This document shows, in pieces, positions 3,667 to 58,197 of a DNA stretch of 64,000 nt. The stretch is from IMG/VR virus record IMGVR_UViG_3300020810_001156, positions 188,604 through 252,603 of that record; one strand, 5' to 3'. Numbering within the stretch: position 1 is the stretch's first letter; every line of letters starts with the position of its first letter. Below the pieces are notes generated by a model. The model was given only the letters and a program-made list of their open reading frames with translations, had not been told where the DNA came from and ran no database searches. Both the position numbers and the translations under genes were made by a program.

Positions 3667-3712
3667 AAATATATTTCTATATACTTATATATAAACATAT
3701 AATTTGTATATT

Positions 3713-3910: not shown

Positions 3911-3932
3911 AAAAAAGTTATTTAAATAAGTT

Positions 3933-5324: not shown

Positions 5325-5325
5325 T

Positions 5326-5682: not shown

Positions 5683-5688
5683 GAAGTT

Positions 5689-7454: not shown

Positions 7455-8076
7455 TGTTACATATGCAATTACAGTTTGTAATGAGATAAATGAAATTACA
7501 AAATTAATAAACTTTCTTCACCCAAGAATCCAATCAGATGATGAGATTTTGATTCAGTATGATGAAGATGGTGTTACTGATGATGTTATGGGTTATCTGA
7601 GAATCATAAATGATTTGCATGATAATGTAAATGTGATTGGATTCCCTCTAAATAAAGATTTTGCATCTTACAAAAACAATCTAAAGAATCATGCTAAAGG
7701 TATTTTCATCTTCCAAATCGATGCTGATGAATTACCAAATGAATATTTGATTACAAATATGCATGATTTATTAAATGCAAATTTAGATATCGATTTATTC
7801 TTCGTTCCAAGAGTAAACACAGTTGAAGGATTGACACCAGAACATATCCAAAAATGGAGATGGAATGTAAATGAAAAAGGATGGGTGAATTGGCCTGATG
7901 TACAAACTCGTTTATATAGAAGAACTTCTGAAATTGAGTGGGTTGGTAAAGTACATGAAAGAATCAAAGGTTATAATACAATGACTTATTTACCATTAGA
8001 AGAAGATTTCTCATTGTATCATCCAAAGGATATAGAAAGACAAGAAAAACAAAACGCATTATACGAAACTATATGA
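7447..8076 (+). CDS. GT2 glycosyltransferase
   Basis: YAITVCNE, IDADE, W.GKVHE. Confidence 0.85.
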   Translation: MVNVTYAITVCNEINEITKLINFLHPRIQSDDEILIQYDEDGVTDDVMGYLRIINDLHDNVNVIGFPLNKDFASYKNNLKNHAKGIFIFQIDADELPNEYLITNMHDLLNANLDIDLFFVPRVNTVEGLTPEHIQKWRWNVNEKGWVNWPDVQTRLYRRTSEIEWVGKVHERIKGYNTMTYLPLEEDFSLYHPKDIERQEKQNALYETI

Positions 8077-9053
8077 AAGTAGCTTTTCTAACGGAAATGG
8101 GATTTGAGGGAACTATTCCCAATGAACATCCAAACGCTAGAACTGAGTTTGCTTGGATGAACGCTTTAGATGCGGTTCATTACCCATTAACAAAATACCA
8201 ATCGGTAAGTGGATATGATGTTGTGTTTATCATCTTCCCAAAAGGTAAACTATTTTTATCAGCAGAGGGTTCTAAAATAGGAGAAGGATTCAATCCAGCT
8301 TCTCAATATCTAAATGAACCAATAGTAGATACTTTAAAGAGTGTAAACAAAAAAGTATATTATATTCAAGAAGGACCTCATTGGTGGTGGAATGATTATG
8401 AGATTGTAGACCAAATTCAGTTCTATAATTTTTTAACAAAAACCGATGGTATCTTTGCACACAATGAATCCGATGTAAATTACTATAAAGGATTGTTACC
8501 AAATAAAAAAATAAAAGTGATTAGAACCTTAATGATTGAAGATTTGATTAAAAACATAAAATCACAATCTGAAGATAAGGTGTTGATTGGTGGTAACTTT
8601 GCAAGGTGGTATGGTGGATTCGAATCCTATATGGTAGCAACCGAATTTGGTGTTCCTATTTGGGGACAAGAATCTCATGCTAAGCGAAGTAACGAAGGAG
8701 CAATGGAAGATTTGAATCACTTTGATAGAATGGTTTGGATTGATTGGATGAAAGAAGTATCTAAGTTCAAATATGGGGTTCATCTAATGCCAACTGTAGC
8801 AGCTGGTACATTCTCACTTAATTGTGCATACTTTGGAATACCTGTAATTGGTAACATCAAAGTAGATACTCAAAAAACACTACATCCACTAACTTCAGTT
8901 GAAGTTGATGATGTGAAAGGTGCTAGAGAATTAGCTCAGAAATTAAGAGATGATAAAGATTTCTACAATCAATGTAGTAAGTTGGCTAGACAACAATATC
9001 AAAGTTATTACACCAAAGAAATTTGGTTAAATTATATGAAAGAAAGAATATGA
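8073..9053 (+). CDS. Probable GT-B glycosyltransferase
   Basis: C-terminal AGTFSLNCAYFGIPVIG resembles a GT-B nucleotide-binding region; cluster context. Confidence 0.55.
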   Translation: MKVAFLTEMGFEGTIPNEHPNARTEFAWMNALDAVHYPLTKYQSVSGYDVVFIIFPKGKLFLSAEGSKIGEGFNPASQYLNEPIVDTLKSVNKKVYYIQEGPHWWWNDYEIVDQIQFYNFLTKTDGIFAHNESDVNYYKGLLPNKKIKVIRTLMIEDLIKNIKSQSEDKVLIGGNFARWYGGFESYMVATEFGVPIWGQESHAKRSNEGAMEDLNHFDRMVWIDWMKEVSKFKYGVHLMPTVAAGTFSLNCAYFGIPVIGNIKVDTQKTLHPLTSVEVDDVKGARELAQKLRDDKDFYNQCSKLARQQYQSYYTKEIWLNYMKERI

Positions 9054-9820
9054 TTACAGCAGTACTAAATGGTTACAAACGAGGAGATAACCTCAACGAA
9101 CAATTGGAAGCGTTAAAAAATCAAACCTTACCACCTGATGAGATTTTATTATGGTACAATAATCCAGGTGATAATGATTTATTAAATTATGATATTGGTG
9201 GTGAAATACCAGTAGCTTATTGTAATTACAACTTTGGGGTTTGGGCAAGATTCTACTTTGCTATGAACGCTAGAAATCCATATGTAGTGGTATTTGATGA
9301 TGATACAATTCCGGGTAAAAAGTGGTTAGAAAATTGTATGAACACAATGAATGAAAGGGAGGGTTTATTAGGTACTGTTGGATTACTTTATCCAAATCCT
9401 CTCCCACCACAAAATTCTTCTTATTATGAACACTACCTCAGATTTGGCTGGCCAGAATTAGGTAACAATGATAGAACTGTTCAAGTTGATTTAGTTGGAC
9501 ATAGTTGGTTCTTCAAAAAAGAATGGTTATCTCATATGGTAAGAGAATTGCCTGACCCAAAATACAATACTTGCGGTGAGGATATGCACTTCTCTTATAT
9601 GTTACAAAAGTACGCTAATATTCCTACATTTGTACCACCACACCCTCGTTCAGATATGGAACTTTGGGGAAGTATTAAGGGTGGTGAGTATGGTGGAGAT
9701 GTTAACTCTCTTTGGGAATCAAATCAAGTAAATGTAGAAGGTACACCATTCAAACAATTGATGAATCAATATTTTCACGAACAAAGAAATAAAGGCTGGA
9801 AATTAGTAAATGAAAAATAA
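9050..9820 (+). CDS. GT-A (GT2-like) glycosyltransferase
   Basis: GYKR, FDDD, GEDMHFS. Confidence 0.75.
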   Translation: MITAVLNGYKRGDNLNEQLEALKNQTLPPDEILLWYNNPGDNDLLNYDIGGEIPVAYCNYNFGVWARFYFAMNARNPYVVVFDDDTIPGKKWLENCMNTMNEREGLLGTVGLLYPNPLPPQNSSYYEHYLRFGWPELGNNDRTVQVDLVGHSWFFKKEWLSHMVRELPDPKYNTCGEDMHFSYMLQKYANIPTFVPPHPRSDMELWGSIKGGEYGGDVNSLWESNQVNVEGTPFKQLMNQYFHEQRNKGWKLVNEK

Positions 9821-10811
9821 ACCAATATTACTCTGCTTTGGGACAAGACCCGAATGGTTGAAAATTAAACCATTGATTAAACTTATGGATAGAAGTGAAT
9901 ATAAACTTCTATTCACAGGTCAACACCCTGATTTGTTGAAGGATGTGGAAGTTGATTATCAAATCAATATGAGTACAACTAACAATAGATTGGACTCTAT
10001 CATTTCAGATTGTATGATTCAATTTCCAAATGGAGATTTTAAAGGTGTATTGGTACAGGGAGACACCGGTTCAGCATTTGGTTGCGCATTAGCCGCATTT
10101 AATAGACAAATCCGAATCTATTATTTGGAAGCAGGATTAAGGAGTGGTGATTTACAACACCCATATCCTGAAGAAGGTTATAGACAGATGATTGCAAGAA
10201 TCGCTGATGTAAACTTTACACCAACTGAATTATCGGCACAAAATCTTAAAGATGAAAAAGTACATGGAAGTATCTACACAGTTGGAAACTCAGTATTAGA
10301 TAACTTAGTAGATTTTCCAAAACCTACAATGGAAAATATTATTTTGATTACTTTACATCGTAGAGAAAATCACCATTGGATGGATAAATGGTTTGAGGAG
10401 ATTGAAAAACTTGCAGTTGAATATCCACATTATACATTTGTATTACCAATTCACCCAAACCCAAATGTAAAGAAACATAGACACATTTTAAAGAATGTAA
10501 CTGTGGTAGAACCAATGGAACATACGCATATGATTAATACTCTAATCAAATCAAACCTAATCATTTCAGATAGTGGTGGTTTGCAAGAAGAGGGTTCATT
10601 CTTCAATAAGAAAGTAATTGTATGTAGAAAAACAACCGAAAGACCTGAAGGTATAGAAACAGGTCATTTACATTTGTGTGATTCTCCTGAAGATTTGGGT
10701 GAATTATTTGGAAAACTAATAGAAAATCCGTATATTAGTGAAAATTGTCCTTATGGGGATGGATATACTTCACAAGCGGTATTAGAAATATTAAGAAATG
10801 AAGAACTTTAG
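9810..10811 (+). CDS. wecB: UDP-N-acetylglucosamine 2-epimerase (non-hydrolysing)
   Basis: GTRPE, TGQH, QGDT, EAGLRS, PEE, HRREN, DSGGLQEE, PYGDG. Confidence 0.93.
   Translation: MKNKPILLCFGTRPEWLKIKPLIKLMDRSEYKLLFTGQHPDLLKDVEVDYQINMSTTNNRLDSIISDCMIQFPNGDFKGVLVQGDTGSAFGCALAAFNRQIRIYYLEAGLRSGDLQHPYPEEGYRQMIARIADVNFTPTELSAQNLKDEKVHGSIYTVGNSVLDNLVDFPKPTMENIILITLHRRENHHWMDKWFEEIEKLAVEYPHYTFVLPIHPNPNVKKHRHILKNVTVVEPMEHTHMINTLIKSNLIISDSGGLQEEGSFFNKKVIVCRKTTERPEGIETGHLHLCDSPEDLGELFGKLIENPYISENCPYGDGYTSQAVLEILRNEEL
10707..10738 (+). promoter_or_regulatory. Internal Bacteroidota-type promoter within the wecB 3' end
   Basis: TTTG-N20-TATATTAG about 60 nt before ORF 10798. Confidence 0.55.
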
Positions 10812-11574
10812 AGGAGATTTTGTAAAACTAAAAACCAAATTAGAGAATCAAGAACACTTTGCATTCTCTCGTTATTCTGATGGTGAAATGTATATTCTAC
10901 AAAATAAAGAATTGGTGTTGGATAATGGGTTGATTCAAATTGGTGATGAGAAGCAAGGTGGTGTTTATCAACCTGCTGATTTCAAACATTTTGACCCAAA
11001 AGAACATTCGTTTTACCAACAAAAGTTAGTGGAATCACTTCAGTACAAACAACCAAACTATTATAGAGGAATTAGTTGTAGTTGTTGTGTAGGTAAGGAA
11101 CAATTTGATTGGCAAGTTGATTTAGCTGGTGGGGATGATGAAACTCTAACTTGGGCAAATCTTTGGGTAAATGGAAACTATCCTTTATTCATTACACACA
11201 TTCTACCAATCCTTTATAGTAGAGATTGTGTATTCGTTGGACATGAAGATGCAAACTTAGATAGATTACCATTCTTTGTGAAAGATTTTAGAGTAGGTTA
11301 CAACGCAATGATTAATGATTATGGAAAAATTGAAGAAATGGCTGAGTGGATTAAAGAAAACAACATTGAAAATCATGTATTCCTTTTCTCAGCATCCACA
11401 TTTACAAACTTGGCAGTATATCAGTTGTTCAGAGAGTTTCCTAATAATACCTATATTGATATTGGAACTTGTCTTACTCCTATGATGGATATGCCAACAC
11501 ATAGGGGTTATTTACAAGCCTTTTGGAATTATAGACCTAATCAAGATATTCAAAAAGTATGCATATGGAATTAG
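10798..11574 (+). CDS. GT-D fold (DUF1792-like) putative glycosyltransferase
   Basis: FSRYSDGE at the N-terminus and IDIG at the C-terminus. Confidence 0.6.
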   Translation: MKNFRGDFVKLKTKLENQEHFAFSRYSDGEMYILQNKELVLDNGLIQIGDEKQGGVYQPADFKHFDPKEHSFYQQKLVESLQYKQPNYYRGISCSCCVGKEQFDWQVDLAGGDDETLTWANLWVNGNYPLFITHILPILYSRDCVFVGHEDANLDRLPFFVKDFRVGYNAMINDYGKIEEMAEWIKENNIENHVFLFSASTFTNLAVYQLFREFPNNTYIDIGTCLTPMMDMPTHRGYLQAFWNYRPNQDIQKVCIWN

Positions 11575-11948
11575 TAGAATGTAGTAAAGAATATTGGGAA
11601 TTCGTAAGAGTTCTTAGAAATGATGAAAGAGTTCAAAGTGGATTTATTCACAACAATTTTATCACCGAAGAAATGCAAAAAAAGTATATGAGTGGAAACT
11701 CACAATACTATCGTATTGCTTTAGTAGATGGAGTGCCCGCTGGTTATGTGGGTGTTATCGAAGATGATATTAGAGTATGCACTGACCCTTTCTTTCAAGG
11801 TAAAGGAGTTGGTAAGTTTATGATAAATGAAATTATGAAAGAATATCCAACTGCATTTGCAAAAGTAAAAATAGATAATGAAGCAAGTTTGAGATTATTT
11901 AGAAGTTGTGGATTTAAAAAGAAATTTTATATACTAACAAAAGATTAA
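11565..11948 (+). CDS. GNAT N-acetyltransferase (PseH-like)
   Basis: LRND..V, FQGKGVG, N.ASLRLF...GF. Confidence 0.85.
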   Translation: MELVECSKEYWEFVRVLRNDERVQSGFIHNNFITEEMQKKYMSGNSQYYRIALVDGVPAGYVGVIEDDIRVCTDPFFQGKGVGKFMINEIMKEYPTAFAKVKIDNEASLRLFRSCGFKKKFYILTKD

Positions 11949-11949
11949 G

Positions 11950-12576
11950 ATGAAACATAATCCATATAAAATCGTAAGAATGTTTGAAGAGGAGATTGCT
12001 GAATACACAGGTGCTCCCTATGCTATCTCAGTAGATAGTTGTACAAACGCACTATTTTTGGTTTGTAAGTGGATGGGAGTTAATGAAGTTACCATTCCAT
12101 CTAAAACTTACTTATCAGTTCCTCAATCAATCACACACGCTGGTGGTGAGGTTATCTTTGATAAAAGAGCAGAAACAAATCATTGGAACGGAATGTATCA
12201 ATTGAAACCATACCCAATTTGGGATGCAGCTAAAAGATTGACAAGTGGGATGTATGTAGAAGGGCAGTTTATGTGTTTATCTTTCCACATCAAAAAACTA
12301 CTTCCAATTTGGAAAGGTGGTATGATTCTAACCGATAACGCTGAAGCAGCAGATTGGTTTAAGAAAGCAAGATATGAAGGTAGAAGTGAAAAGTACTATA
12401 AAGATGATGATATCACATTCCACGGATGGAATATGTATATGACACCTCAACAAGCTGCACATGGATTGGCTATGTTCCAAAACTATCCTGAACATATGAG
12501 TGATTTGGGTGAAGATAACGGATATAGAGATTTAACTGAATTTACGGTATTTAAAAATCATAGAACAATCGAATGA
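11950..12576 (+). CDS. Short DegT/DnrJ/EryC1/StrS PLP sugar aminotransferase
   Basis: FEEEIAEY, VDSCTNAL, WDAA, SFHIKK, GGMILT; only 208 aa. Confidence 0.8.
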   Translation: MKHNPYKIVRMFEEEIAEYTGAPYAISVDSCTNALFLVCKWMGVNEVTIPSKTYLSVPQSITHAGGEVIFDKRAETNHWNGMYQLKPYPIWDAAKRLTSGMYVEGQFMCLSFHIKKLLPIWKGGMILTDNAEAADWFKKARYEGRSEKYYKDDDITFHGWNMYMTPQQAAHGLAMFQNYPEHMSDLGEDNGYRDLTEFTVFKNHRTIE

Positions 12577-13193
12577 AAGTAATCATAGGTGGTATGGGGT
12601 TGAGTGGTAGCACTTTGTGTTATAATATATTTAGAGTTTTAAGAGATAACTCTGAATTGAATTATGAAGTCATAAAGATACATGAATATAATCATGCAGC
12701 TACTATGGGAAAAACTATTTTTATGATTAGAGATTTAAGAGATACTGTTGCATCTATGTTAAGGAAAGACCCAGAAAGATGGAATGGTGATGTTGAAGAA
12801 GCATCTAAGTATCAAATGATGTGGTACTATGATACTTGGAAAGATGTAAATAAAGATATTGTTTGGAAATATGAAGAGTATAAATCGAATCCATATGAAC
12901 ACACTTACTCAGCTATTAGTAAATTGGGATTGAATGTATCATATGATTTAGTAAAACAGGTTATAGATACTTGTGAAAATATAAAAGATATGAATATTCC
13001 ACATCACCAAGATTTTATACAAACTGAAGAAGAAGCTATTTTATGGGAAACCACAAAGATGAGTAAAAAACATATTACCAATGGTGGTAAGATTGGTGGA
13101 TATAAAGAATATTTAACCGAAGAGCAAATTAGATTTATTGAAACAAAATATAAATACTTTTTTGAAGAACAAAATTATCAGTTAGATTATTAA
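12573..13193 (+). CDS. Sulfotransferase-like protein
   Basis: SGST PAPS loop, RDLRDTVAS, KYEE, GKIGGYK..L. Confidence 0.7.
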   Translation: MKVIIGGMGLSGSTLCYNIFRVLRDNSELNYEVIKIHEYNHAATMGKTIFMIRDLRDTVASMLRKDPERWNGDVEEASKYQMMWYYDTWKDVNKDIVWKYEEYKSNPYEHTYSAISKLGLNVSYDLVKQVIDTCENIKDMNIPHHQDFIQTEEEAILWETTKMSKKHITNGGKIGGYKEYLTEEQIRFIETKYKYFFEEQNYQLDY

Positions 13194-13197
13194 AAAT

Positions 13198-13923
13198 ATG
13201 AAAGTAGCACTTTGTTTACATGGCTTATTTGATTCTTTGACAGATGAAAATTCAAAGGGATTGGATGGTTATAATCATATCAAAAAAAATATTTTGGATG
13301 TGGTTGATACCGATGTATTTGTACACAGTTGGGAAATTGAAAAAATGGATGAGATTACTAAATTATATAATCCAAAATCTTCCATATTTGAAGGACAGAA
13401 AGATTTTACTAATATAATAAACAAAAACAAATTAAACACATTATCAGCTCCACCAAGACCACCATTTAGTGTTTTATCTCATCTTTATAGTGTAACTGAA
13501 TCTATGAAGTTGGCATTTAATAGTGAGGTTGAATATGATATTATCATTAAGGCAAGATTTGATTTAGGAAGAATTAATAGAAGAACATCTGGGCCGGGTA
13601 GAGGTAATCCATATCCAGTTCAATGTATCAATTTTCAAACTGATATTGAAAAAGATAAGATTTATATGGCGAATTGGCAACACTTTCATATGGGACCTGC
13701 TGATATGTGGTTTTATGGTTCATCAAAAGTAATGAATCCTTTCACAACTTTATACAAATCGGTAGAAAAAAATATGAAGTTAGGTGGTGAGTTTCATCAA
13801 TTCGCTACATCAATAGAAGGTAATCCAAATGATTTATCGAATGCTATTGCATTTTATAAATGGTGGATGATAGGAAATGGATTATGGAATAAAAAAATAA
13901 AATTAGATACAATATGGGAATAA
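13198..13923 (+). CDS. Putative glycosyltransferase (KVALCLxG / RFD family)
   Basis: KVALCLHG, DVFVHSW, YDIIIKARFDL; paralogous to ORF 52879 and to the C-half of ORF 34338. Confidence 0.6.
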   Translation: MKVALCLHGLFDSLTDENSKGLDGYNHIKKNILDVVDTDVFVHSWEIEKMDEITKLYNPKSSIFEGQKDFTNIINKNKLNTLSAPPRPPFSVLSHLYSVTESMKLAFNSEVEYDIIIKARFDLGRINRRTSGPGRGNPYPVQCINFQTDIEKDKIYMANWQHFHMGPADMWFYGSSKVMNPFTTLYKSVEKNMKLGGEFHQFATSIEGNPNDLSNAIAFYKWWMIGNGLWNKKIKLDTIWE

Positions 13924-14612
13924 ACGTACCTTTAATAATTTATACACATTCGGATTATAAAGATGTGTGGAAACTTTTATTTGGTCAGTTAAAAAAATAC
14001 TTACCAAATCAAAAAGTATATGTTTTAAGTGATTCTAATGCAGAAGAAATACCATCGAATTATACTACAATAGTTTACGATGATTCTAAAGTTTATACTG
14101 ATAGATTAAAACAATGTCTTTCTCAGATTAATGAAGATGTGGTTCTATTTCAGCATGAGGATATGGTTCTTTTTAATGAACCTAAATTTGAATTGTTTGA
14201 TAAGTACATAGATTATGTTAAAAATGAGATGGTTGATAGTGTTAAGTTGATTTATGTCCAAGAAAACGATGTGGTATCTGAATTAGATTCTACATTAATT
14301 TCTAATTCATATTCTAAATTTTCTATTCAACCTACTTTGATAAAATTAAAAAATTTCGTATCTTTGTTAGATTCAACCGAACCTTTAAATATTTGGGATT
14401 TTGAATTAGCAGTTCCTGCTGAAGGAAAACACTATATGGTAAGATTGGGTGATGAGAAAAAACGAGGATTATATCACTCTGATAGTATCATATATCCTTA
14501 CATAGCAACTGCTATTACAAAAGGAAAGTGGAACTATGGTGAATATTCATTTGAATTCGATAAATTATTTAATGAATATGGTATTATACCATTTGAAAGA
14601 GGAATTTCATAA
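13914..14612 (+). CDS. Putative GT-A glycosyltransferase
   Basis: HSDYKDVW, FQHEDM, IWDFE, KGKW. Confidence 0.5.
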   Translation: MGINVPLIIYTHSDYKDVWKLLFGQLKKYLPNQKVYVLSDSNAEEIPSNYTTIVYDDSKVYTDRLKQCLSQINEDVVLFQHEDMVLFNEPKFELFDKYIDYVKNEMVDSVKLIYVQENDVVSELDSTLISNSYSKFSIQPTLIKLKNFVSLLDSTEPLNIWDFELAVPAEGKHYMVRLGDEKKRGLYHSDSIIYPYIATAITKGKWNYGEYSFEFDKLFNEYGIIPFERGIS

Positions 14613-15220
14613 TGAATAAAATAAAATTTGATATTGGTGCTAATAGTGGAAGTGATACTAGAAGAATGGCTTCGGATGGTTCTATTGTTTACGCATTTGA
14701 ACCAACACATGAATTATTAATGAATCATCTCTGGCCACTTTCTAATCAGAATCCAAATATAAAAGTTATACCATTTGCGGTTGATGTTAAAAACTCATTC
14801 CAAACATTCAATATTTCTGCAAATAGAGATTGGGGTTGTAGTAGTTTATATGAGTTTTCCGATGATATAGAGAAGAAATGGCCAAACAGACCCGATTTCA
14901 AAAAAACTCATTCTTATGAAGTTCCTACAATAACTTTATATGATTTTTGTAATTTGTATAACATAGATAGGATTGATATGTTACACATAGATGCACAGGG
15001 TAATGATTTTAATGTTCTATTGAGTTTAAAAGACAAAATATCAATAGTTAAAGAAGGGGTGGTTGAAGCATCTGATAAAGTTGATTTATACAGTGGAGCT
15101 ACCAATAGAATAGAATACATAAGATATTTTTTAATATCGAATGGATTTAAGATTGTAAAAGAAACACCTAACGATGTTGTAGGTGCCGAAGTTAATATAA
15201 GGTTTATAAAAAATGATTAA
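14612..15220 (+). CDS. FkbM-family methyltransferase
   Basis: DIGANSG, AFEP, HIDAQGND. Confidence 0.88.
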   Translation: MNKIKFDIGANSGSDTRRMASDGSIVYAFEPTHELLMNHLWPLSNQNPNIKVIPFAVDVKNSFQTFNISANRDWGCSSLYEFSDDIEKKWPNRPDFKKTHSYEVPTITLYDFCNLYNIDRIDMLHIDAQGNDFNVLLSLKDKISIVKEGVVEASDKVDLYSGATNRIEYIRYFLISNGFKIVKETPNDVVGAEVNIRFIKND

Positions 15221-16577
15221 GTTAGTTATATTTGATTTGGATGGTGTTCTTGTTGAAGCAAAAAACATCCACTATGATGCACTCAATGAAGCTTTGGGTG
15301 AACAATACGCAATTAGTTGGGCTGAACACCTATCAACTTACGATGGATTAAAAACCAATCAAAAGTTGGAGATGTTGAGTGAGATAAAAGGATTACCAAC
15401 CGAACTACACAAAGAGATTTGGGAAGGTAAACAAAAATTGACATTACAAAAGTTGAAAGAGTTAAAACCAAACCAAACTCTACAATCGGTAATGAACGCA
15501 TTGGTTGAGGATGGATACAAAATAGCAGTTTGTTCCAATTCAATCAGAAAGACAGTTTTGACTGTACTTTCAAAGTTGGGTATTATGGAGTTTATGGATT
15601 ACATCATCTCAAACGAAGATGTACAAAACTCTAAACCACACCCTGAGATGTATTGGAGAGCAATCTCAAAGATGGGATGTTTACCATCTGAAACTCTAAT
15701 CGTAGAGGATTCACCTTATGGGTTACTTGCAGCATCTCGTTCTAACGCTCATGTGTTGAGAGTTAGAAATCCACAAGAAGTAACCTACACAAACATATTT
15801 AAAAAATTAACTGAAATAGAAATGGGACAAACAAATGATAAACCAAAATGGGTGGATAATAAGTTAAATGTATTAATTCCAATGGCTGGAGCTGGTAGTA
15901 GATTCCAACAAGCAGGATACACATTTCCAAAACCACTAATTGATGTGGAAGGTAAACCTATGATTCAGGTCGTGGTAGAAAATCTAAACATCGAAGCAAA
16001 TTATATCTATGTAGTTCAGAAATCACATAGGGAGAAATTCAATTTGGATACCTTACTTAATCTTATTACTCCTAATTGTAAGATTGTAGAAGTAGATGGT
16101 ATTACCGAAGGAGCAGCTTGTACTGCACTTTTGGCTAAAGAACATATTGATAACGATAATCCATTATTCTTCGCTAACTCAGACCAATTTGTAGAATGGG
16201 ATTCAAATGAGTTCTTCTACAAAATGAATGAGAACGATGCTGATGGTGGTATCCCAACATTCAAAGCAACTCACCCAAAGTGGTCATTTGCTAAGTTGGA
16301 TGAAGATGGTTTTGTGACCGAAGTGCAAGAGAAAAACCCAATCTCAGATTTAGCAACAGTGGGTTTCTATTATTGGAAACATGGTTCTGATTTTGTGAAA
16401 TACGCTGAAGAAATGATTGAGCAGGATATTAGAGTAAACAATGAATTCTATGTTTGTCCTGTTTACAACAACGCAATTAAAGGTGGATTAAAGGTGAGAA
16501 CATTTGATGTACCAAAGATGTGGGGACTTGGAACACCTGAAGATTTGAATAGATACTTAGAGAATTATGGTAAGTAG
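15213..16577 (+). CDS. HAD phosphatase fused to sugar nucleotidyltransferase
   Basis: FDLDGVL, SKPHPE and EDS in the N-half; IPMAGAGSRF..PKPLI and LGTPEDL in the C-half. Confidence 0.88.
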   Translation: MIKLVIFDLDGVLVEAKNIHYDALNEALGEQYAISWAEHLSTYDGLKTNQKLEMLSEIKGLPTELHKEIWEGKQKLTLQKLKELKPNQTLQSVMNALVEDGYKIAVCSNSIRKTVLTVLSKLGIMEFMDYIISNEDVQNSKPHPEMYWRAISKMGCLPSETLIVEDSPYGLLAASRSNAHVLRVRNPQEVTYTNIFKKLTEIEMGQTNDKPKWVDNKLNVLIPMAGAGSRFQQAGYTFPKPLIDVEGKPMIQVVVENLNIEANYIYVVQKSHREKFNLDTLLNLITPNCKIVEVDGITEGAACTALLAKEHIDNDNPLFFANSDQFVEWDSNEFFYKMNENDADGGIPTFKATHPKWSFAKLDEDGFVTEVQEKNPISDLATVGFYYWKHGSDFVKYAEEMIEQDIRVNNEFYVCPVYNNAIKGGLKVRTFDVPKMWGLGTPEDLNRYLENYGK

Positions 16578-17256
16578 TGATAACAAATATACCAAAATGC
16601 AAAAGGGTGCGTATAGAAGTGGAACTTCTAACCATCCTGAGCATAATGGTAATCCCGATTATTGGAATATTCTTTTAGGTGATTTAAAAGATAGAGATAG
16701 TTGGGTAAATAAAGTTGGTTTAGATTTTGCTTGTGGTAAGGGTAGAAATGTAACAAATATGTTATCTTTATCCGATTGGAAACGAATTGATGGTATTGAT
16801 ATCTCAGAAGCTAACATTGTTTATTGTAAGGAAAATTATAAAGGACAAGATAGTGATTGGTATGTAAATAATGGAGTTGATGTATCTCAATTGAAAAATA
16901 ACGAATATGATTTCATCATGTCAACCATCGCACTACAACATATTCCAGTATATGATATCAGAAAATCACTAATAACCGATTTACTTAGAACTTTGAAACC
17001 AGGTGGAATATTTTCATTCCAAATGGGATATGGTCAGGAAATAAAACCAAATGAAAATAGATATCCATACCACACAAACCATTATGATGCTGGTGGAACT
17101 AATTCACATTCTGATGTGAGGGTACAAAGTGAATCTGAAATTATAGAAGATTTAACAAACATTGGATTTATCAATATAGAAACATATGTGAGAGATACAT
17201 TCTCAGATAATGGACATCCTCAATGGATATATGTAAAAGCTTATAAACCAGAATAA
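16567..17256 (+). CDS. Class I SAM-dependent methyltransferase
   Basis: LDFACGKG, GIDIS, LQHI, LKPGG. Confidence 0.85.
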   Translation: MVSSDNKYTKMQKGAYRSGTSNHPEHNGNPDYWNILLGDLKDRDSWVNKVGLDFACGKGRNVTNMLSLSDWKRIDGIDISEANIVYCKENYKGQDSDWYVNNGVDVSQLKNNEYDFIMSTIALQHIPVYDIRKSLITDLLRTLKPGGIFSFQMGYGQEIKPNENRYPYHTNHYDAGGTNSHSDVRVQSESEIIEDLTNIGFINIETYVRDTFSDNGHPQWIYVKAYKPE

Positions 17257-18486
17257 ATGAAAAGAATAACATTTGTAATACCTTGTAGAAGTAATCTACC
17301 ATATCTACAACAAGCCGTAGGTTCTATTGAAGAACACTATGGTAATTCGCATGATGTGGTAATCTTAGATGATGCATCTGATGATAATAGTTGGAATTGG
17401 ATTACTGAATACTCAGAAGGTAGGGATAATATAATCGCTTATAGAAACGAAGGACCTGATAGAGTTGGACACACTGTATTGTATGATGTTGGTTTTGATT
17501 TAGCAAAAACCGAAGTAGTATCAATTCTACACTCGGATATGGTGGTAACACCAAACTATGTGGAAAATATGTTGAAACACTTAGAAGTAAAAAAGGTAGT
17601 TTCAGCAACTCGAATTGAACCACCACTTCATCCACCTGGTCCTGAAAAGTATGTACAAAACTTTGGATTAGAAGTAGATGAGTTCTCAGAACAAAAAGAA
17701 AACTTTTTAAACTTCGTATCACAAAAGGAAATAGAAAATGAGGGTAAAGTTACTGATGGTATATTTGCACCTTGGATGATGTACAAAGAAGATTTTGTTG
17801 ATATTGGTGGGCATGATTTCTTATTCGCACCAATGGAGTTAGAAGATTCTGATATCTTTAATAGATTTTTTCTAAATGGATACGAGTTGATTCAAAGTAG
17901 AGATGCATTTGTATATCATATGACTTGTAGGGGTAGTAGGTTCAAAGATGGAATTGAAATTGAAAAAGAAATTCCACTACCCGATGGCACAATTTGGTAC
18001 AAACCAAAAGATTCCGAAGAGTACACTATTCTAAGACAACACAAATTTAGAGAATGGTGGAGAAAGTGGCATACTGATGTATTACATGATGAATTTATGA
18101 TGCCAATCGTTCCAAGTAGATATGATACTGGATTTATTGTTAAAAATTGTAATACTCAAATTCTATCCATCTTAGAACCTTGGTGTGATACAATCTATGT
18201 TGATTGTGATTACAAAGCATATGTAGATGCTGAAAACGAAAAATCTGAATATGATATATCGGAATCGGTTAAACCATATGATAATGAAAAGAACAATCAC
18301 ATATTGATTTCATTTGATGCAAGTAAATTAACAAATCAACACTTTACTGAATTCATCAAACAATTACCATTCATCATTGAAGAAACTGGTCAAACTGGTT
18401 CATTTAATTGGGATATCTTTCAAATAGATATTATCTCTTTAGAAGAAGTTGATATGATTAAACCACATTTTAAAAATATATTTTAA
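17257..18486 (+). CDS. GT2 glycosyltransferase
   Basis: FVIP, DDASDD, HSDM, EDSD. Confidence 0.85.
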   Translation: MKRITFVIPCRSNLPYLQQAVGSIEEHYGNSHDVVILDDASDDNSWNWITEYSEGRDNIIAYRNEGPDRVGHTVLYDVGFDLAKTEVVSILHSDMVVTPNYVENMLKHLEVKKVVSATRIEPPLHPPGPEKYVQNFGLEVDEFSEQKENFLNFVSQKEIENEGKVTDGIFAPWMMYKEDFVDIGGHDFLFAPMELEDSDIFNRFFLNGYELIQSRDAFVYHMTCRGSRFKDGIEIEKEIPLPDGTIWYKPKDSEEYTILRQHKFREWWRKWHTDVLHDEFMMPIVPSRYDTGFIVKNCNTQILSILEPWCDTIYVDCDYKAYVDAENEKSEYDISESVKPYDNEKNNHILISFDASKLTNQHFTEFIKQLPFIIEETGQTGSFNWDIFQIDIISLEEVDMIKPHFKNIF

Positions 18487-19364
18487 TGAAAAATAAATCA
18501 ACTTTAGTATGTATGCATGTAATGCCTCAAGAGATAGAGATGTTCATACAACTAATAAATAATTATAAATTATCTCTTAAACATTTAGATGATAGTGATG
18601 ATGTTACTCTAAAAATATCATTAAACTTAAATCCTGAGTTAACGGATTGGGATAATACAAACGTACCTAAAGATGAATTTATCGGTGTTTTTAATGATGT
18701 TACAAATGATATATCCAATTTAGATAAAGAAATTATAACCGATACTTCTTTGTGGGGAACAACCCAACAAAAAAGAGAAGCTATAAAATTAGATTATGAC
18801 CAATTTATCTTTTGTGATACTGATATAGTTTTACATCAACATCAATTAAAACATCAATTAAATGCAGCTAAACAATTAAATGGTATGTACATACTATCAC
18901 CAGCATTACCAAGATGGTGGGATAAAACATGGGATGTATTGGTATCATCAAATAGGTTAAATGGTGAATTTGGCGAAGCGTTTGAGAAAGAATGTATAAA
19001 AGATGTACTAACACAAAAATATACCGATTTATCTTTAAGACTGGTTGCACCAATTAAATTTGGTAATGGTATGCACACATTATATTCAAAGGAGTTTTGG
19101 GATTTCATAAAAATACCAGAATCATTTGGTGGATATGGGCCTGAAGATACTTTTGCTATGTATGCATCCCATAACGCTATTGTAAGTAAACAATACCCAA
19201 TAAAACAGTATGTATTAGATGGTATCTATATAACTGAAGATTATACTCATAGAATCCCAAGCTTTAACGATAACTTTACTTCTTTTAATAAAAAAGATGA
19301 ATTCTATAAAAAAGCAGAATCTCTCTTTGATAAAGAAATGGATAACTTTTTACAAAGAATCTGA
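18486..19364 (+). CDS. Putative GT-A glycosyltransferase
   Basis: CDTD, GYGPED. Confidence 0.55.
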   Translation: MKNKSTLVCMHVMPQEIEMFIQLINNYKLSLKHLDDSDDVTLKISLNLNPELTDWDNTNVPKDEFIGVFNDVTNDISNLDKEIITDTSLWGTTQQKREAIKLDYDQFIFCDTDIVLHQHQLKHQLNAAKQLNGMYILSPALPRWWDKTWDVLVSSNRLNGEFGEAFEKECIKDVLTQKYTDLSLRLVAPIKFGNGMHTLYSKEFWDFIKIPESFGGYGPEDTFAMYASHNAIVSKQYPIKQYVLDGIYITEDYTHRIPSFNDNFTSFNKKDEFYKKAESLFDKEMDNFLQRI

Positions 19365-29431: not shown

Positions 29432-29463
29432 TTTGGAAAATCCAAATTAATTTCGTATATTTG
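29432..29463 (+). promoter_or_regulatory. Bacteroidota-type promoter
   Basis: TTTG-N20-TATATTTG. Confidence 0.75.
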
Positions 29464-29481
29464 AACAATTAAAATAAAGTT

Positions 29482-29967
29482 ATGGCAAAAGGTAACATAT
29501 ACTGGTTTACAGGCCAACCGGCTCACGGAAAAACTGTACTCGGTAAGAAGTTAGTCGAACTCCTCCAAACCGAGAAAAGAAATTGGAGAAAAGATGTATT
29601 CCATGTAGATGGTGATGACCTAAGAGCCCTCACTGTAAATAAAGATTATTCAGAACAAGGTAGAATTGATAACATTCGTAGAGCTCAGATGATTGCTGAG
29701 TATCTTTGTAATAACGAATGTGATGTGGTCGTATCATTAGTAGCACCTTATGAATGGTTAAGAGAAGAATTTAAAGAAAGAATCGGTTTAGATAATTTTC
29801 AAGAGTTCTATGTACATTGCGCTACTCCAAGAGAAAGAGACCACTTCCATGCAAAGGATTATGTAGCACCTCAAAAGAATTTTTTTGATGTTGATACTAC
29901 AAAAGACAATCCGAATCAATCATTCACAAAAATCGTAAATCATTTAAGAGAAACAAATAAGTTATAA
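29482..29967 (+). CDS. cysC: Adenylyl-sulfate (APS) kinase-like protein
   Basis: WFTGQPAHGKT, DGDDLR, YSEQGRIDNIRR, VSLVAPY..RE, Y.AP. Confidence 0.8.
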   Translation: MAKGNIYWFTGQPAHGKTVLGKKLVELLQTEKRNWRKDVFHVDGDDLRALTVNKDYSEQGRIDNIRRAQMIAEYLCNNECDVVVSLVAPYEWLREEFKERIGLDNFQEFYVHCATPRERDHFHAKDYVAPQKNFFDVDTTKDNPNQSFTKIVNHLRETNKL

Positions 29968-30365
29968 TGGCAAATTTTCAAGCAAAAGCAGACAAAGAGA
30001 GTTCCTCTACGGAAAAGAAATATTCAGTATTTTTCGGGAGATGGCAACCATTTCACAAAGGTCACTATTGGCTAATTAATGAAAGGTTGAAAGAAGGAAA
30101 AAATGTGTGGGTAGCAATCAGAGATGTAAAACCTGATGAGAAAAACCCTTGGACAGCACATGAAATAATGATGAACCTTTCAGAGGAATTAAAAGACCTC
30201 ATTGAAGAAGGTAAAATCTTTTTATCAATTGTTCCTGATATTGAATCAATCAATTATGGAAGAGGGGTAGGATACGATGTAATTGAACACGTACCACCAC
30301 AAGAAATAGGTGAAATCTCTGCAACTTCTATTAGAGAACAAATGAAAAAAGATGGTAAGTTATAA
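29967..30365 (+). CDS. HxGH nucleotidyltransferase (cytidylyltransferase-like)
   Basis: GRWQPFHKGH, ISATSIR. Confidence 0.8.
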   Translation: MANFQAKADKESSSTEKKYSVFFGRWQPFHKGHYWLINERLKEGKNVWVAIRDVKPDEKNPWTAHEIMMNLSEELKDLIEEGKIFLSIVPDIESINYGRGVGYDVIEHVPPQEIGEISATSIREQMKKDGKL

Positions 30366-30564
30366 GAGACACATTGCTAAAACTATAAGTTGGAGGATTA
30401 TTGGTACATTAGATACAATGATACTATCAGCTGTAATCACTGGAAGTTGGGAAATGGGATTAGCTATCGGAGGTGTAGAAGTATTCACAAAAATGATACT
30501 TTATTTCCTTCACGAAAGAGCTTGGTATAGATTTTCTAAGTTTGGTGTAGAAAAAAAGGATTAA
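30352..30564 (+). CDS. DUF2061 membrane protein
   Basis: KRHIAKTISWRIIG...LYFLHERAW. Confidence 0.85.
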   Translation: MVSYKRHIAKTISWRIIGTLDTMILSAVITGSWEMGLAIGGVEVFTKMILYFLHERAWYRFSKFGVEKKD

Positions 30565-30610
30565 TCTATATTTATATACATAGAAACAAAAACATAAATA
30601 GTATATAAAA

Positions 30611-34031: not shown

Positions 34032-34341
34032 ACTAAACGATATGTTCAGAGGATGGATAGTTGGAAACTTTGAACCATCACTTTGGAAAACTGATGATGT
34101 TGAGGTTGCAGTAAAAACCTATAAAAAGGGTGATTACGAACAAAAACATTACCACAAAGTAGCAACTGAAATCACCATCATTTCAAAGGGTAGAGTTTTG
34201 ATGAATAATGAACTTTACGAAGAAGGTGATATTATTACAATAGAGCCAGGAGAAGCAACTGATTTTAGAGTATTGGAAGATACTATAACAACTGTAATTA
34301 AGTTTCCTTGTTTAACTGATGATAAATATTTAGTTAAGTGA
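34018..34341 (+). CDS. Cupin protein
   Basis: GWIVGNFEP, HYHKVATE. Confidence 0.8.
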   Translation: MKVNKLNDMFRGWIVGNFEPSLWKTDDVEVAVKTYKKGDYEQKHYHKVATEITIISKGRVLMNNELYEEGDIITIEPGEATDFRVLEDTITTVIKFPCLTDDKYLVK

Positions 34342-35810
34342 ATTTAAGATTTATAAACATACCATTAACCGGTGGATTTCATTTTGAAAAAAACTTTGAT
34401 TCAAGATGGGGAACTATAAACTCCCATCCATATAAAATAGTGAGTGTTGGTCATTCTTGGAACTACAAAACTCAGATTAAAGGATGGCAAGATTGGGATT
34501 TTCCCAACCAACCTCAGAATGTAATGAGGGATGTAGCAGTATTTTCAGTTCCTAAAGATGATATATTGGTTACAACAATTAGAAATCCATTTGAAATATT
34601 ATTTGAATATTACAATTATAATTGGGCTAGATGTAAAGTTCACACTAAATCAGAAACGTTTGAACACTTTGTTGATTCTTACTTAAATGAGGAATTTCAT
34701 GCACCTGCATTTTCAAAAAGTTTATTTTCTCAATTAAAGGATATTGATGGCAATTGGTTAATCGATGATACATCAATAGTATTAAGATGGGAAACCTTAA
34801 AATTGGATTTTGAAAAGTTTGGAAAACATATAAAAGTAGATGTTACAGATTATAATTTTCCTAAAACAAATTTTGATTGGAAACAAAAATATAGAAAAGA
34901 CCAGATTCATCAATTATCTAAACTATGGAAAGCTGATTTAGAATACTTTGGATATTCTTTTAATGGATTAACCCAAACAGTATCTAAAATAGAAATAAAA
35001 AAACCAAAGATAGCTATTTGTTTTTCTGGACACCTTAGAGATTTGGAAAGAACAAAAGATTATTGGAATGAGATGATTCGGAAGTATGATATGGATGTAT
35101 ATGCATCCTTTTGGGATATTGAAAATGAAAAATTGGGTGATACCTTAAATAACTTTAAAAAATTGTATAATACAAAGATAATTGAAGTGGATAACTATTT
35201 AAATTTTCACAAATCAACTCAGGTATTAGTACAACCAACCTTAAATCCACCAAAAGAATTAGCACCTCAGTTGCAAGAAGCTACCAAAAGATTTGGACAA
35301 TTACCAATGTGGTATAAGATTTGGAAAGCTAATATGCTGACCAAAACGTTTGATATAGATTACGATATTGTGGTTAGAGCTAGAACCGATTCTTTTTTTA
35401 TTGGAGATATTTCAATTGATAAAACCGATATGATAAATGTACCTATTGGTAGAAATCATATTAAAGTTTGGCCTAATTCCGAAGGTATTAATGATATATT
35501 TGCATATGGTTCTCCGAAACTTATGGATTACTACTCATCTACATTTATTCACATGATGGAATATCTTAATATGGGATATTACCCATTTCCACCAGAACAC
35601 TTTTTAAGAGTTCATTTAAGTAGAATAGATACTATTGTTAGATTTATTCCCAATTATATTACAATAACAAGAACATCACTGGGCCGAGAAGATGAAATTT
35701 ATAATAACTTCGTAAAAAATCTTCAAGAAGAGCGAATACATACTTCTAATATGCGATTTGAATTACCAAGTTCAAATAAATTTACAAAACCAATATCTGA
35801 TTCTTTTTGA
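34338..35810 (+). CDS. Sulfotransferase-like domain fused to a KIAICFSG-type putative glycosyltransferase
   Basis: IPLTGG, RNPF, R.ETL..DF and D..YFGYSF in the N-half; IAICFSGHLR and RARTD in the C-half. Confidence 0.65.
   Translation: MNLRFINIPLTGGFHFEKNFDSRWGTINSHPYKIVSVGHSWNYKTQIKGWQDWDFPNQPQNVMRDVAVFSVPKDDILVTTIRNPFEILFEYYNYNWARCKVHTKSETFEHFVDSYLNEEFHAPAFSKSLFSQLKDIDGNWLIDDTSIVLRWETLKLDFEKFGKHIKVDVTDYNFPKTNFDWKQKYRKDQIHQLSKLWKADLEYFGYSFNGLTQTVSKIEIKKPKIAICFSGHLRDLERTKDYWNEMIRKYDMDVYASFWDIENEKLGDTLNNFKKLYNTKIIEVDNYLNFHKSTQVLVQPTLNPPKELAPQLQEATKRFGQLPMWYKIWKANMLTKTFDIDYDIVVRARTDSFFIGDISIDKTDMINVPIGRNHIKVWPNSEGINDIFAYGSPKLMDYYSSTFIHMMEYLNMGYYPFPPEHFLRVHLSRIDTIVRFIPNYITITRTSLGREDEIYNNFVKNLQEERIHTSNMRFELPSSNKFTKPISDSF

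Positions 35811-56568: not shown

Positions 56569-58197
<1,629 letters not shown>

What the first reader, a model, noticed from the sequence alone, without database searches (positions are those of the whole stretch)
29482..30564. Compact APS kinase + 132-aa HxGH nucleotidyltransferase + DUF2061 operon: possible minimal PAPS supply
Seen: three coupled genes behind their own promoter, and two sulfotransferase-like domains elsewhere (12573, 34338). Established: PAPS synthesis needs ATP sulfurylase plus APS kinase, and Sat-type sulfurylases belong to the HxGH nucleotidyltransferase superfamily. Inference: the tiny enzyme may be an unrecognised minimal ATP sulfurylase feeding glycan sulfation.
Basis: partly seen in the sequence, partly recalled or inferred. 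Interest (0 to 1): 0.65.

Follow-up and report, generated by a model that had tools for sequence, protein, structure and literature searches.

The report
Phage PAPS module with NMNAT-derived candidate sulfurylase
A salt-marsh/marine jumbo phage carries a three-gene cassette (APS kinase, a 132-aa nucleotidyltransferase and a small membrane protein) that most likely makes the sulfate donor PAPS, and comparative genomics suggests the small enzyme is an undescribed type of ATP sulfurylase derived from NMN adenylyltransferases.

Summary
The three overlapping genes exist as described: ORF1 (APS-kinase family with a shortened lid), ORF2 (132-aa HxGH/ISxTxxR nucleotidyltransferase) and ORF3 (DUF2061). 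The "own promoter" is no better than chance. Only one of the two proposed sulfotransferases (12573) holds up.

- ORF2-type enzymes are fused to APS kinases in both orders, and also to DUF2061.
- In viral contigs the kinase lies directly upstream in 74/76 loci and DUF2061 directly downstream in 69/80.
- In 29 cellular genomes the complete ORF2-type NTase is fused or adjacent to an APS kinase in almost every case. A sulfotransferase lies within 8 kb in 13 of them.
- 19 of the 29 have neither Sat nor CysD, although two universal markers are found in 29/29. Their kinases pass the strict apsK cut-off in 7 of the 8 tested.
- By contrast, 49 of 52 apsK-positive Omnitrophota genomes without the NTase, and 6 of 6 reference genomes, have a canonical sulfurylase.

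ORF2 is not a reduced Sat. It is an archaeal-type NMNAT that lost the ~25-residue block holding NMNAT's invariant Trp and gained two conserved arginines.

No assay exists, and some genomes have cysDN beside the fusion. I put sulfurylase activity at about 0.6. I found no prior description.

The parts
29432..29481 (+). 50-nt AT-rich spacer upstream of ORF1, with a weak sigma-70-like match at 29433-29461
   Evidence: The promoter-like match is 9/12 and the number of such sites is not above the shuffle expectation, so a dedicated promoter is not shown.
29482..29967 (+). ORF1, 161 aa: APS-kinase-family P-loop kinase with a shortened lid; proposed APS 3'-kinase (APS + ATP -> PAPS + ADP)
   Evidence: PF01583 58 bits, above cut-off. 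TIGR00455 62.4 bits, below the equivalog cut-off of 138.7. PDB APS kinases at E 2.4e-10. The alignment with equivalog-grade kinases keeps the P-loop, DGDxxR, YS..GR, NIRR and APY but lacks ~19 lid residues. 2,780 relatives found.
29967..30365 (+). ORF2, 132 aa: HxGH/ISxTxxR nucleotidyltransferase of an NMNAT-derived family that is almost always linked to APS kinase; proposed ATP sulfurylase (ATP + sulfate -> APS + PPi)
   Evidence: PF01467 24.8 bits. Model pLDDT 91.5. NMNAT Z 10.4, PPAT 10.1, Thermus Sat Z 8.1. hhalign to NMNAT E 1.3e-30 with a ~25-residue deletion. Family signature: GRWQPxHxGH, (I/V)RD, NP, PDI, YGRxVGY, ISATxIR. Fusions to APS kinase.
30352..30564 (+). ORF3, 70 aa: DUF2061 protein with two hydrophobic helices, a phage-specific partner of the pair; proposed membrane anchor or organiser
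   Evidence: PF09834 79.6 bits. Directly downstream of the NTase in 69/80 viral loci. Fused to the NTase in P0297 (37% identity to ORF3, E 5e-12; PF09834 precomputed). Not seen within 8 kb of the cellular fusions.
12573..13193 (+). Probable small PAPS-dependent sulfotransferase inside the glycan cluster; the likely consumer of the module's product
   Evidence: It is the only sulfotransferase candidate in the 252.6-kb phage.
3933..19364 (+). Glycan-synthesis gene block: GT1, three GT2, UDP-GlcNAc 2-epimerase, DegT-type aminotransferase fragment, GNAT, FkbM and other methyltransferases, HAD + sugar-phosphate nucleotidyltransferase
34338..35810 (+).
   Evidence: Only a weak atlas lead to Sulfotransfer_2.

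Best explanation
The cassette is a compact, self-contained PAPS synthase. ORF2 is an NMNAT-derived minimal nucleotidyltransferase that adenylylates sulfate (ATP + sulfate -> APS + PPi). ORF1 is a lid-reduced APS kinase that immediately phosphorylates APS to PAPS, which pulls the unfavourable first step. This is why the two are fused or translationally coupled almost everywhere. ORF3 (DUF2061) probably holds the pair at the membrane. During infection the PAPS feeds the probable sulfotransferase at 12573 in the phage's glycan cluster. Shown here: gene identities, coupling, fusions, neighbourhoods, phyletic patterns and fold. Inferred: sulfate as the acceptor, the role of the two family-specific arginines (R52, R99) as the anion site, the DUF2061 role, and the sulfated glycan as end product.
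For: (1) Rosetta-stone fusions. 27/150 representatives of the ORF2 family carry a fused APS kinase and no other catalytic partner recurs. Fusions occur in both orders, with kinase halves scoring 139-231 bits on PF01583 and 150-257 bits on TIGR00455.
(2) In cellular loci every full-length ORF2-type NTase is fused or adjacent to an APS kinase, apart from one contig-end case (L024), one locus with the kinase 1 kb away (L048) and one with none (L040). True NMNATs from the same scan have no kinase nearby.
(3) Viral loci: kinase upstream in 74/76, DUF2061 downstream in 69/80.
(4) PAPS consumers. A sulfotransferase hit lies within 8 kb in 13/29 genomes, plus orthologues in G002 and G005 and L096 (flippase, fusion, sulfotransferase). 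21/29 genomes have a sulfotransferase hit against 2/14 reference genomes (p 4e-4).
(5) Pathway hole. 19/29 have neither Sat nor CysD, although ribosomal protein S2 and RpoB are found in 29/29. One of the 19 is a 4.5-Mb assembly labelled as a chromosome (G005). Their kinases pass the apsK equivalog cut-off in 7 of 8 tested.
(6) Baseline. 49/52 apsK-positive, NTase-negative Omnitrophota genomes and 6/6 reference genomes have Sat or CysD. Fisher p is 0.019 within the phylum sample and 1e-8 for 19/29 against 3/52.
(7) ORF2 lost the ~25-residue NMNAT block containing the invariant Trp, changed NMNAT's invariant GS to RD, and gained the invariant YGRxVGY loop, which fits a small anionic acceptor.
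(8) The phage itself has no Sat or CysD but has a probable sulfotransferase.
(9) RNA-library contigs span the gene junctions in metatranscriptomes, one of them DNase-treated.
Against: No biochemical data exist. By sequence and fold the nearest relatives are NMNAT and PPAT, not Sat; similarity to Sat is limited to the shared ISxTxxR end. 10/29 genomes also have Sat or CysD, and in G001 cysD/cysN lie immediately beside the fusion, so the NTase is not always needed as a sulfurylase. The window's ORF1 scores well below the apsK equivalog cut-off and lacks most of the lid. Salvo- and DLP_6-type phages carry lid-less fusions among DNA-metabolism genes with no visible sulfotransferase. Most genomes are MAGs and are not phylogenetically independent, so the p-values are indicative only. 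The complex prediction gave no verdict. I could not map residues in 3D because no coordinates were available.
Confidence: 0.6

Rival explanations
1. ORF1 is a real APS kinase fed by host-made APS. ORF2 is a non-sulfurylase accessory, a nucleotide-binding regulatory or scaffolding partner of the kinase, as described for the catalytically dead sulfurylase-like domain of Entamoeba APS kinase.
For: The precedent is in bioRxiv 10.64898/2026.04.02.716029. cysD/cysN sit beside the fusion in G001, and Sat or CysD is present in 10/29 carriers. Phage cysC alone is a known auxiliary gene (PMC10914622).
Against: The catalytic HxGH and ISxTxxR motifs and the GR(W/F)QP arginine are invariant or nearly so across 68 diverse members, unlike a decayed domain. 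19/29 carriers would then have an equivalog-grade APS kinase with no APS source, against 3/52 in the baseline.
Confidence: 0.15
2. The pair makes a different activated compound. Either ORF2 adenylylates (or otherwise nucleotidylates) another small anion and ORF1 then adds the 3'-phosphate, as PPAT and dephospho-CoA kinase do. Or ORF1 phosphorylates a sugar or alcohol that ORF2 then nucleotidylates (HldE-like) for the glycan cluster.
For: The kinase-plus-HIGH-NTase architecture also occurs in NadR, CoA synthase and HldE (general knowledge; NadR, PPAT and HldC appear in the fold lists). The window's ORF1 is below the equivalog score. The family has rare fusions to a methyltransferase, DUF6717 and GDP-mannose dehydratase. 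Relatives insert radical-SAM, 2OG-oxygenase and HAD genes into the cassette.
Against: ORF1 keeps the APS-kinase-specific phosphosulfate positions. The same NTase is fused to equivalog-grade apsK domains and sits next to sulfotransferases. A phage contig (L010) joins a 257-bit apsK to this NTase and DUF2061, which links the phage and cellular forms.
Confidence: 0.12
3. ORF2 is simply an NMN adenylyltransferase for NAD+ salvage (NadR-like, with ORF1 as a riboside kinase), for example to counter NAD-depleting defence.
For: The best sequence, profile and fold matches are archaeal NMNAT and NadM. Phage NMNAT/Nudix enzymes appear among weaker hits.
Against: TIGR01527 scores 30 bits against a cut-off of 181. 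The block with NMNAT's invariant Trp is deleted and GS is replaced by RD. True NMNATs recovered in the same scan score about 50-70 bits on the family profile against 90-176 for ORF2-type, and never sit next to a kinase. Some carriers have separate NMNAT-like genes. The partner is an APS kinase, not an NR kinase, and the neighbours are sulfotransferases.
Confidence: 0.05
4. In phages the cassette is a nucleic-acid end-healing or modification set (P-loop kinase + HAD 3'-phosphatase + nucleotidyltransferase), unrelated to sulfur.
For: 23 of 80 viral relatives insert a ~112-aa HAD phosphatase resembling polynucleotide-kinase 3'-phosphatase domains. The Salvo and DLP_6 fusions lie among DNA-metabolism genes.
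Against: The HAD hits are at or below threshold, and a nucleotide 3'-phosphatase fits PAP removal equally well. The kinase is specifically APS-kinase-like (the next family is 12 orders of magnitude weaker). The window has no HAD insert. DUF2061 and the sulfotransferase links are unexplained by this model.
Confidence: 0.03

Closest known systems
Archaeal-type NMN adenylyltransferase (MJ0541 / NadM family; PDB 1f9a, 1ej2, 2qjt)
   Same: Closest relative by every measure: hhalign probability 99.85%, E 1.3e-30 over the full length; Z 10.4. Shares the GRxQPxHxGH and ISxTxxR nucleotide-binding motifs and the NPxT motif.
   Different: The ORF2 family lacks ~25 residues that include NMNAT's invariant Trp, replaces the invariant GS with RD, carries an invariant YGRxVGY loop, fails the NMNAT equivalog score (30 against 181), and is almost always tied to an APS kinase, which true NMNATs are not.
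Sat-type ATP sulfurylase and bifunctional Sat-CysC / PAPS synthase (PDB 1v47, 1j70, 2gks, 1x6v)
   Same: Proposed same reaction. Same HxxH nucleotidyltransferase superfamily fold (Thermus Sat Z 8.1 over 116 residues). Same habit of fusing to APS kinase in either order. The shared C-terminal (I/V)SGTxxR-type motif gives weak PF01747 hits in 13/150 members.
   Different: The catalytic unit is ~110 aa instead of ~200 aa plus a PUA-like domain. There is no QxRNP or GRDHAG motif by alignment, hhalign probability to Sat is only 42% over 40 columns, and ORF2 itself gives no PF01747 hit. Descent is from NMNAT, not Sat.
CysD/CysN heterodimeric sulfurylase
   Same: Functional analogue that supplies APS to CysC. 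CysN is often fused to CysC, just as this NTase is.
   Different: Unrelated fold (PAPS-reductase-like ATP pyrophosphatase plus GTPase) and GTP-driven. It co-occurs with the NTase fusion in 8/29 genomes, once as a direct neighbour.
Phage-encoded cysC auxiliary metabolic gene
   Same: ORF1 belongs to what surveys call viral cysC. It is reported as typical of larger phage genomes and as transcribed in situ (PMC10914622).
   Different: That work places cysC in assimilatory sulfate reduction and, in the passages read, does not mention the NTase or DUF2061 partners. Here the context points to PAPS supply for sulfotransfer, with its own candidate sulfurylase.
Entamoeba histolytica APS kinase with a sulfurylase-like domain
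   Same: An APS kinase carrying an extra nucleotidyltransferase-superfamily domain.
   Different: That domain is Sat-like and has lost substrate binding. The ORF2 family is NMNAT-like and keeps all nucleotide-binding and catalytic motifs.
NadR and CoA synthase (HIGH nucleotidyltransferase + P-loop kinase pairs)
   Same: Same two-fold architecture and the same logic of consecutive adenylyl transfer and phosphorylation. NadR and PPAT are structural neighbours (Z 8.6-10.1).
   Different: Different kinase families and substrates, and no sulfotransferase association.

Membership tests
APS kinase (Pfam PF01583) - ORF1 | Score above the Pfam gathering threshold | tested here: met
   58 bits against 21.1; 57.4 bits in the genome scan.
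APS kinase equivalog (NCBIfam TIGR00455 apsK) - ORF1 | Score above the curated equivalog cut-off of 138.7 bits | tested here: not met
   62.4 bits. Cellular and L010 phage fusion partners do pass, at 150-257 bits.
APS kinase - ORF1 | P-loop, DGDxxR, (F/Y)S..R, NIRR and (S/A)PY core motifs that hold ATP and the phosphosulfate | tested here: met
   All are present in the alignments with PDB APS kinases and with equivalog-grade kinases. The roles of these residues are from general knowledge.
APS kinase - ORF1 | Complete lid segment (RD.KGLYKKA..G.I..FTGI..PYE) | tested here: not met
   About 19 residues are missing; only RD..H.AK and a downstream aromatic remain.
HIGH-motif nucleotidyltransferase superfamily (PF01467) - ORF2 | Pfam threshold, HxGH motif, ISxTxxR motif, Rossmann-like fold | tested here: met
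   24.8 bits against 21. FHKGH and ISATSIR are present and conserved in the family. Confident model with Z 10.4 to NMNAT.
NMN adenylyltransferase, archaeal type (TIGR01527) - ORF2 | Equivalog score, and the acceptor-side block with the invariant Trp | tested here: not met
   30.3 bits against 181.2. The block is deleted in the whole ORF2 family. That this Trp contacts the nicotinamide is from memory and was not tested.
Sat-type ATP sulfurylase (PF01747) - ORF2 | Pfam threshold; QxRNPxHxxH and GRDHAG motifs | tested here: not met
   ORF2 has no PF01747 hit. 13/150 relatives hit weakly through the C-terminal motif only. hhalign to three genuine Sat domains gives 42% over 40 columns. The YGRxVGY loop only resembles GRDHAG by eye.
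ATP sulfurylase (as an activity) - ORF2 | Forms APS from ATP and sulfate | not testable with these tools
   Only indirect support: fusions, neighbourhoods, and the missing Sat/CysD in 19/29 carriers against 3/52 in the baseline.
DUF2061 (PF09834) - ORF3 | Pfam threshold | tested here: met
   79.6 bits against 23.1, profile positions 1-51 of 52.
PAPS-dependent sulfotransferase (PF00685) - ORF at 12573 | Pfam threshold; 5'-phosphosulfate loop and 3'-phosphate motif | tested here: inconclusive
   20.1 bits against 22. Atlas score 0.96 with 194 shared features. GLSGSTL and IRDLRDTVAS are present; the assignment of these motifs is from general knowledge.

The most novel reading that the evidence does not exclude
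The ORF2 family is a third, independently evolved class of ATP sulfurylase: a ~110-residue NMNAT derivative that, fused or coupled to APS kinase, forms the smallest known PAPS synthase. It is widespread in aquatic phages (with a DUF2061 membrane partner) and is the only sulfate-activating enzyme in many CPR, DPANN, Omnitrophota, Planctomycetota, Chlamydiota and Acidobacteriota genomes.
Probability: 0.55. Interest if true: 0.82.

Novelty: new variant of a known kind. Interest (0 to 1): 0.72.

Why it matters
Sulfate activation is thought to rest on two enzyme types, Sat and CysDN. If this family is a third type, genome-based metabolic reconstructions currently miss PAPS synthesis and glycan or lipid sulfation in many small-genome lineages (CPR, DPANN, Omnitrophota) and in thousands of aquatic phages. 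The viral "cysC" counted in sulfur-cycle surveys would then be part of a self-sufficient PAPS and sulfation module rather than a booster of assimilatory reduction. A ~300-residue two-domain PAPS synthase would also be useful for enzymatic and cell-factory sulfation. The claim can be tested directly with simple assays.

Tried and rejected
- **Complex prediction on ORF1+ORF2:** no verdict (score 0.00, controls not run). It is not evidence either way.
- **The search for related loci with the broad alignment A3:** failed for lack of a conserved stretch. The tighter A5 and A8 worked.
- **Word search on the DUF2061 part of P0297:** returned only itself and one other protein, so it gave no view of DUF2061 architectures. 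The DUF2061 literature only lists it in Fur/iron regulons.
- **Pfam-level control for orphan APS kinases:** not clean. PF01583 hits 11/14 reference genomes, and Lactococcus and Methanosarcina have no Sat or CysD hit. I replaced it with the equivalog model.
- **"Shrunken Sat" idea:** rejected by hhalign.
- **"132 aa is exceptionally small":** rejected; the fold-search list includes comparably small superfamily members of 115-126 residues.
- **Sequence-to-PDB searches for the 12573 and 34338 proteins and for the Pyrinomonadaceae sulfotransferase-like gene:** nothing useful.
- **3D residue mapping of R52 and R99 onto Sat or NMNAT ligands:** not possible, because model coordinates are not exposed.
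- **Promoter claim:** not supported.
- **Genes inserted into the cassette in relatives** (twitch radical-SAM, 2OG-Fe(II) oxygenase, a 270-aa unknown, a methyltransferase): gave only generic family hits.
Full report
**Setting.** The window is the last 64 kb of a 252.6-kb virus record rated complete. It has about 32% GC, and almost all genes are on the + strand. It also carries GroEL, a CCA-adding enzyme, a CobS-like ATPase and a DNA methyltransferase. Its only nucleotide match among deposited phages is a 69-nt stretch shared with Flavobacterium myophages. The exact module recurs in salt-marsh and marine metagenomes from many studies.

**Observation.** The three ORFs lie at 29482-29967, 29967-30365 and 30352-30564. 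They overlap by 1 nt (TAATG) and by 14 nt. ORF1 passes the Pfam APS_kinase threshold, ORF2 passes CTP_transf_like, and ORF3 is a clear DUF2061. The "own promoter" is not supported: promoter-like sites are no more frequent than in shuffled sequence. It has a sub-threshold Pfam hit, a strong atlas match and both PAPS-binding motifs, and it is the only candidate in the whole phage. The ORF at 34338 remains a weak lead. The region from 3.9 to 19.4 kb is a genuine glycan-synthesis block.

**The three genes are one conserved unit.**
- PHROG 10255 already unites ORF1-like and ORF2-like halves, and Salvo gp32 and DLP_6 AAY80_227 are such fusions.
- An exhaustive search found 1,107 representatives of the ORF2 family. 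Of the best 150, 27 carry a fused APS-kinase domain, and no other catalytic partner recurs.
- The fusions occur in both orders, with kinase halves that are full-length and high-scoring.
- P0297 is an NTase-DUF2061 fusion.
- On 80 IMG/VR loci, custom profiles place the kinase directly upstream in 74 of 76 evaluable cases and DUF2061 directly downstream in 69 of 80.
- Relatives sometimes insert a radical-SAM enzyme, a 2OG-Fe(II) oxygenase, a 270-aa unknown, or (in 23 loci) a ~112-aa HAD phosphatase.

**Cellular genomes tie the pair to PAPS use.** A scan of species-representative genomes recovered two sharply separate groups. Full-length ORF2-type domains (profile scores 90-176) are always fused or adjacent to an APS kinase, apart from one contig-end case (L024), one locus with the kinase 1 kb away (L048) and one with none (L040). 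Ordinary 170-200-aa NMNATs (scores about 50-70, N-terminal match only) have no kinase nearby.

Among 29 carrier genomes, a Sulfotransfer_1 or Sulfotransfer_3 hit lies on the same contig within 8 kb of the fusion in 13; two of these are weak. In the Pyrinomonadaceae loci a conserved GNAT plus sulfotransferase-like pair follows the gene, including in G005. L096 reads flippase, fusion, sulfotransferase. L012 reads cysD/cysN, fusion, ABC exporter, glycosyltransferase-sulfotransferase fusions. Sulfotransferase hits occur in 21 of the 29 carriers against 2 of 14 reference genomes.

**The missing sulfurylase.**
- Only 3 of the 29 carriers have Sat and 8 have CysD. The union is 10, so 19 have neither.
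- This is not an effect of incomplete assemblies: ribosomal protein S2 and RpoB are each found in 29 of 29, and G005 is a 4.5-Mb assembly labelled as a chromosome.
- The kinases in sulfurylase-free genomes are genuine. Seven of the eight tested pass NCBI's apsK equivalog cut-off, at 150-207 bits against 138.7.
- As a baseline, I used 121 Omnitrophota genomes of at least 80% completeness. 55 of them have apsK. Of the 52 without the NTase, 49 have Sat or a strong CysD and 3 have neither. Of the 3 with the NTase, 2 have neither, and the third has a separate Sat beside a second apsK-like gene.
- All six reference genomes with an equivalog-grade apsK have Sat or CysD.
- Fisher tests give p = 0.019 within the phylum sample and about 1e-8 for 19/29 against 3/52. 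These are indicative only, because the genomes are related.
- An APS kinase without a source of APS makes no metabolic sense, and the domain attached to it belongs to the superfamily that performs exactly this type of adenylyl transfer.

**What ORF2 is.** The AlphaFold model is confident (pLDDT 91.5). Its best structural neighbours are archaeal NMNAT (Z 10.4), PPAT (10.1) and NadM (10.0). Thermus Sat aligns over the whole model at Z 8.1. Profile-profile comparison settles the descent: 99.85% probability and E 1.3e-30 to archaeal NMNAT from end to end, against 42% to Sat over the last 40 columns only.

Compared with NMNAT, the family differs in four ways:
- It lacks about 25 residues that hold an invariant Trp.
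- It replaces the invariant GS after strand 2 with RD.
- It carries an invariant YGRxVGY loop.
- It keeps GRxQPxHxGH, NPxT and ISxTxxR.

So the nucleotide side is intact and the acceptor side is rebuilt, smaller and more basic. That is what one would expect for an acceptor such as sulfate. This last step is inference.

**The window's own version.** ORF1 keeps the P-loop, DGDxxR, YS..GR, NIRR and APY but lacks about 19 lid residues, hence 62 bits on TIGR00455. A phage contig (L010) that joins a 257-bit apsK to the same NTase and DUF2061 bridges the phage and cellular forms. The phage has no Sat or CysD. RNA-library contigs cover the operon in four metatranscriptomes. One contig from a DNase-treated library runs from 29918 to 30577, across both junctions. 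This is consistent with expression as a unit but does not prove a single transcript.

**DUF2061.** It partners the pair only in phages and is absent within 8 kb of the cellular fusions. Its gene overlaps the NTase gene in most loci, and it is fused to the NTase in P0297. A membrane-anchoring or organising role is my inference; nothing tests it.

**Rivals.** The rivals I considered are a regulatory, non-catalytic partner (precedent), a different activated product, plain NMNAT, and an end-healing set prompted by the HAD insert. They are scored in the Rival explanations section. The strongest counter-evidence to the main model is that canonical sulfurylases co-occur in a third of the carriers, once as direct neighbours, and that there is no assay.

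**Literature.** Viral cysC is known as a transcribed auxiliary gene of larger phages (PMC10914622). Six full-text searches found no description of an NMNAT-like sulfurylase, of NTase-CysC fusions or of the DUF2061 link. The library is incomplete, so absence of prior work is not proven.

**Verdict.** I rate the module as a PAPS-supply cassette at about 0.8 and ORF2 as a sulfurylase at about 0.6. It is a new variant of a known kind, with interest 0.72.

Noticed in passing
L104:9676-10020 (also L117:9666-10004, L098:5488-5829); absent from the window: In 23 of 80 viral relatives a ~112-aa HAD phosphatase sits between the kinase and the NTase. It carries DIDGT...LTTAR motifs, with Acid_phosphat_B at threshold, HAD_PNKP below threshold and PDB Pnkp1 at E 3e-3. 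It could remove PAP (a 3'-phosphatase) or hydrolyse PPi.
   Followed up: partly
L006:4471-5520 and 5908-6402; L008:4471-5283 and 3213-4004: Other relatives insert a twitch-domain radical-SAM enzyme, a 2OG-Fe(II) oxygenase, a 270-aa unknown protein or a Methyltransf_24 gene into or next to the cassette. This suggests further chemistry on the product or acceptor.
   Followed up: partly
window 26960-29431: The 823-aa protein directly upstream has a P-loop near its N-terminus (weak Zeta_toxin hit), matches phrog_5268 and, at its C-terminus, phrog_27331. Relatives keep a DUF3008-type protein and an Amidase_2 lysin upstream of the cassette. A 69-nt stretch is 90% identical to Flavobacterium phage immuto.
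   Followed up: no
window 30611-31177: An HTH + HNH endonuclease gene lies immediately downstream of DUF2061. It may be a homing-type element marking a variable junction. RNA-library contigs of related strains diverge from the window at about 29464 and 30624.
   Followed up: no
L001:4575-5321 (Xylella phage Salvo gp32) and L002:3614-4345 (Stenotrophomonas phage DLP_6): Lid-less kinase-NTase fusions annotated 'kinase' or 'hypothetical' sit among MazG, topoisomerase and ligase genes in cultured phages with no obvious sulfotransferase. These are handy, cultivable test cases, and a warning that the phage branch may have another use for the product.
   Followed up: partly
P0324, P0332, P0305 and two members of alignment A2: Rare alternative fusions of the same NTase: to DUF6717, to a class-I methyltransferase, to an unknown 238-aa N-terminal region, and to GDP-mannose 4,6-dehydratase/epimerase domains.
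   Followed up: no
window 11950-12576: A DegT/DnrJ-type aminotransferase ORF of only 208 aa (the profile is 360 long) directly precedes and overlaps the probable sulfotransferase. It may be truncated or split.
   Followed up: no
window 32840-33607: A WavE-family lipopolysaccharide-synthesis protein (PF07507, E 1.6e-10) lies 2.3 kb downstream of the cassette, so glycan-related genes flank the module on both sides.
   Followed up: no
window 56572-58197, 60508-62625, 38636-39847: The window encodes a phage GroEL, a CCA-adding tRNA nucleotidyltransferase and a CobS-like AAA ATPase, typical jumbo-phage auxiliary genes.
   Followed up: no
G098 (Omnitrophota), contigs C8 and C16: This genome has both an NTase-apsK fusion (C8) and, on another contig, a Sat next to a second apsK-like gene. 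It is a natural case for comparing the two routes in one organism.
   Followed up: no
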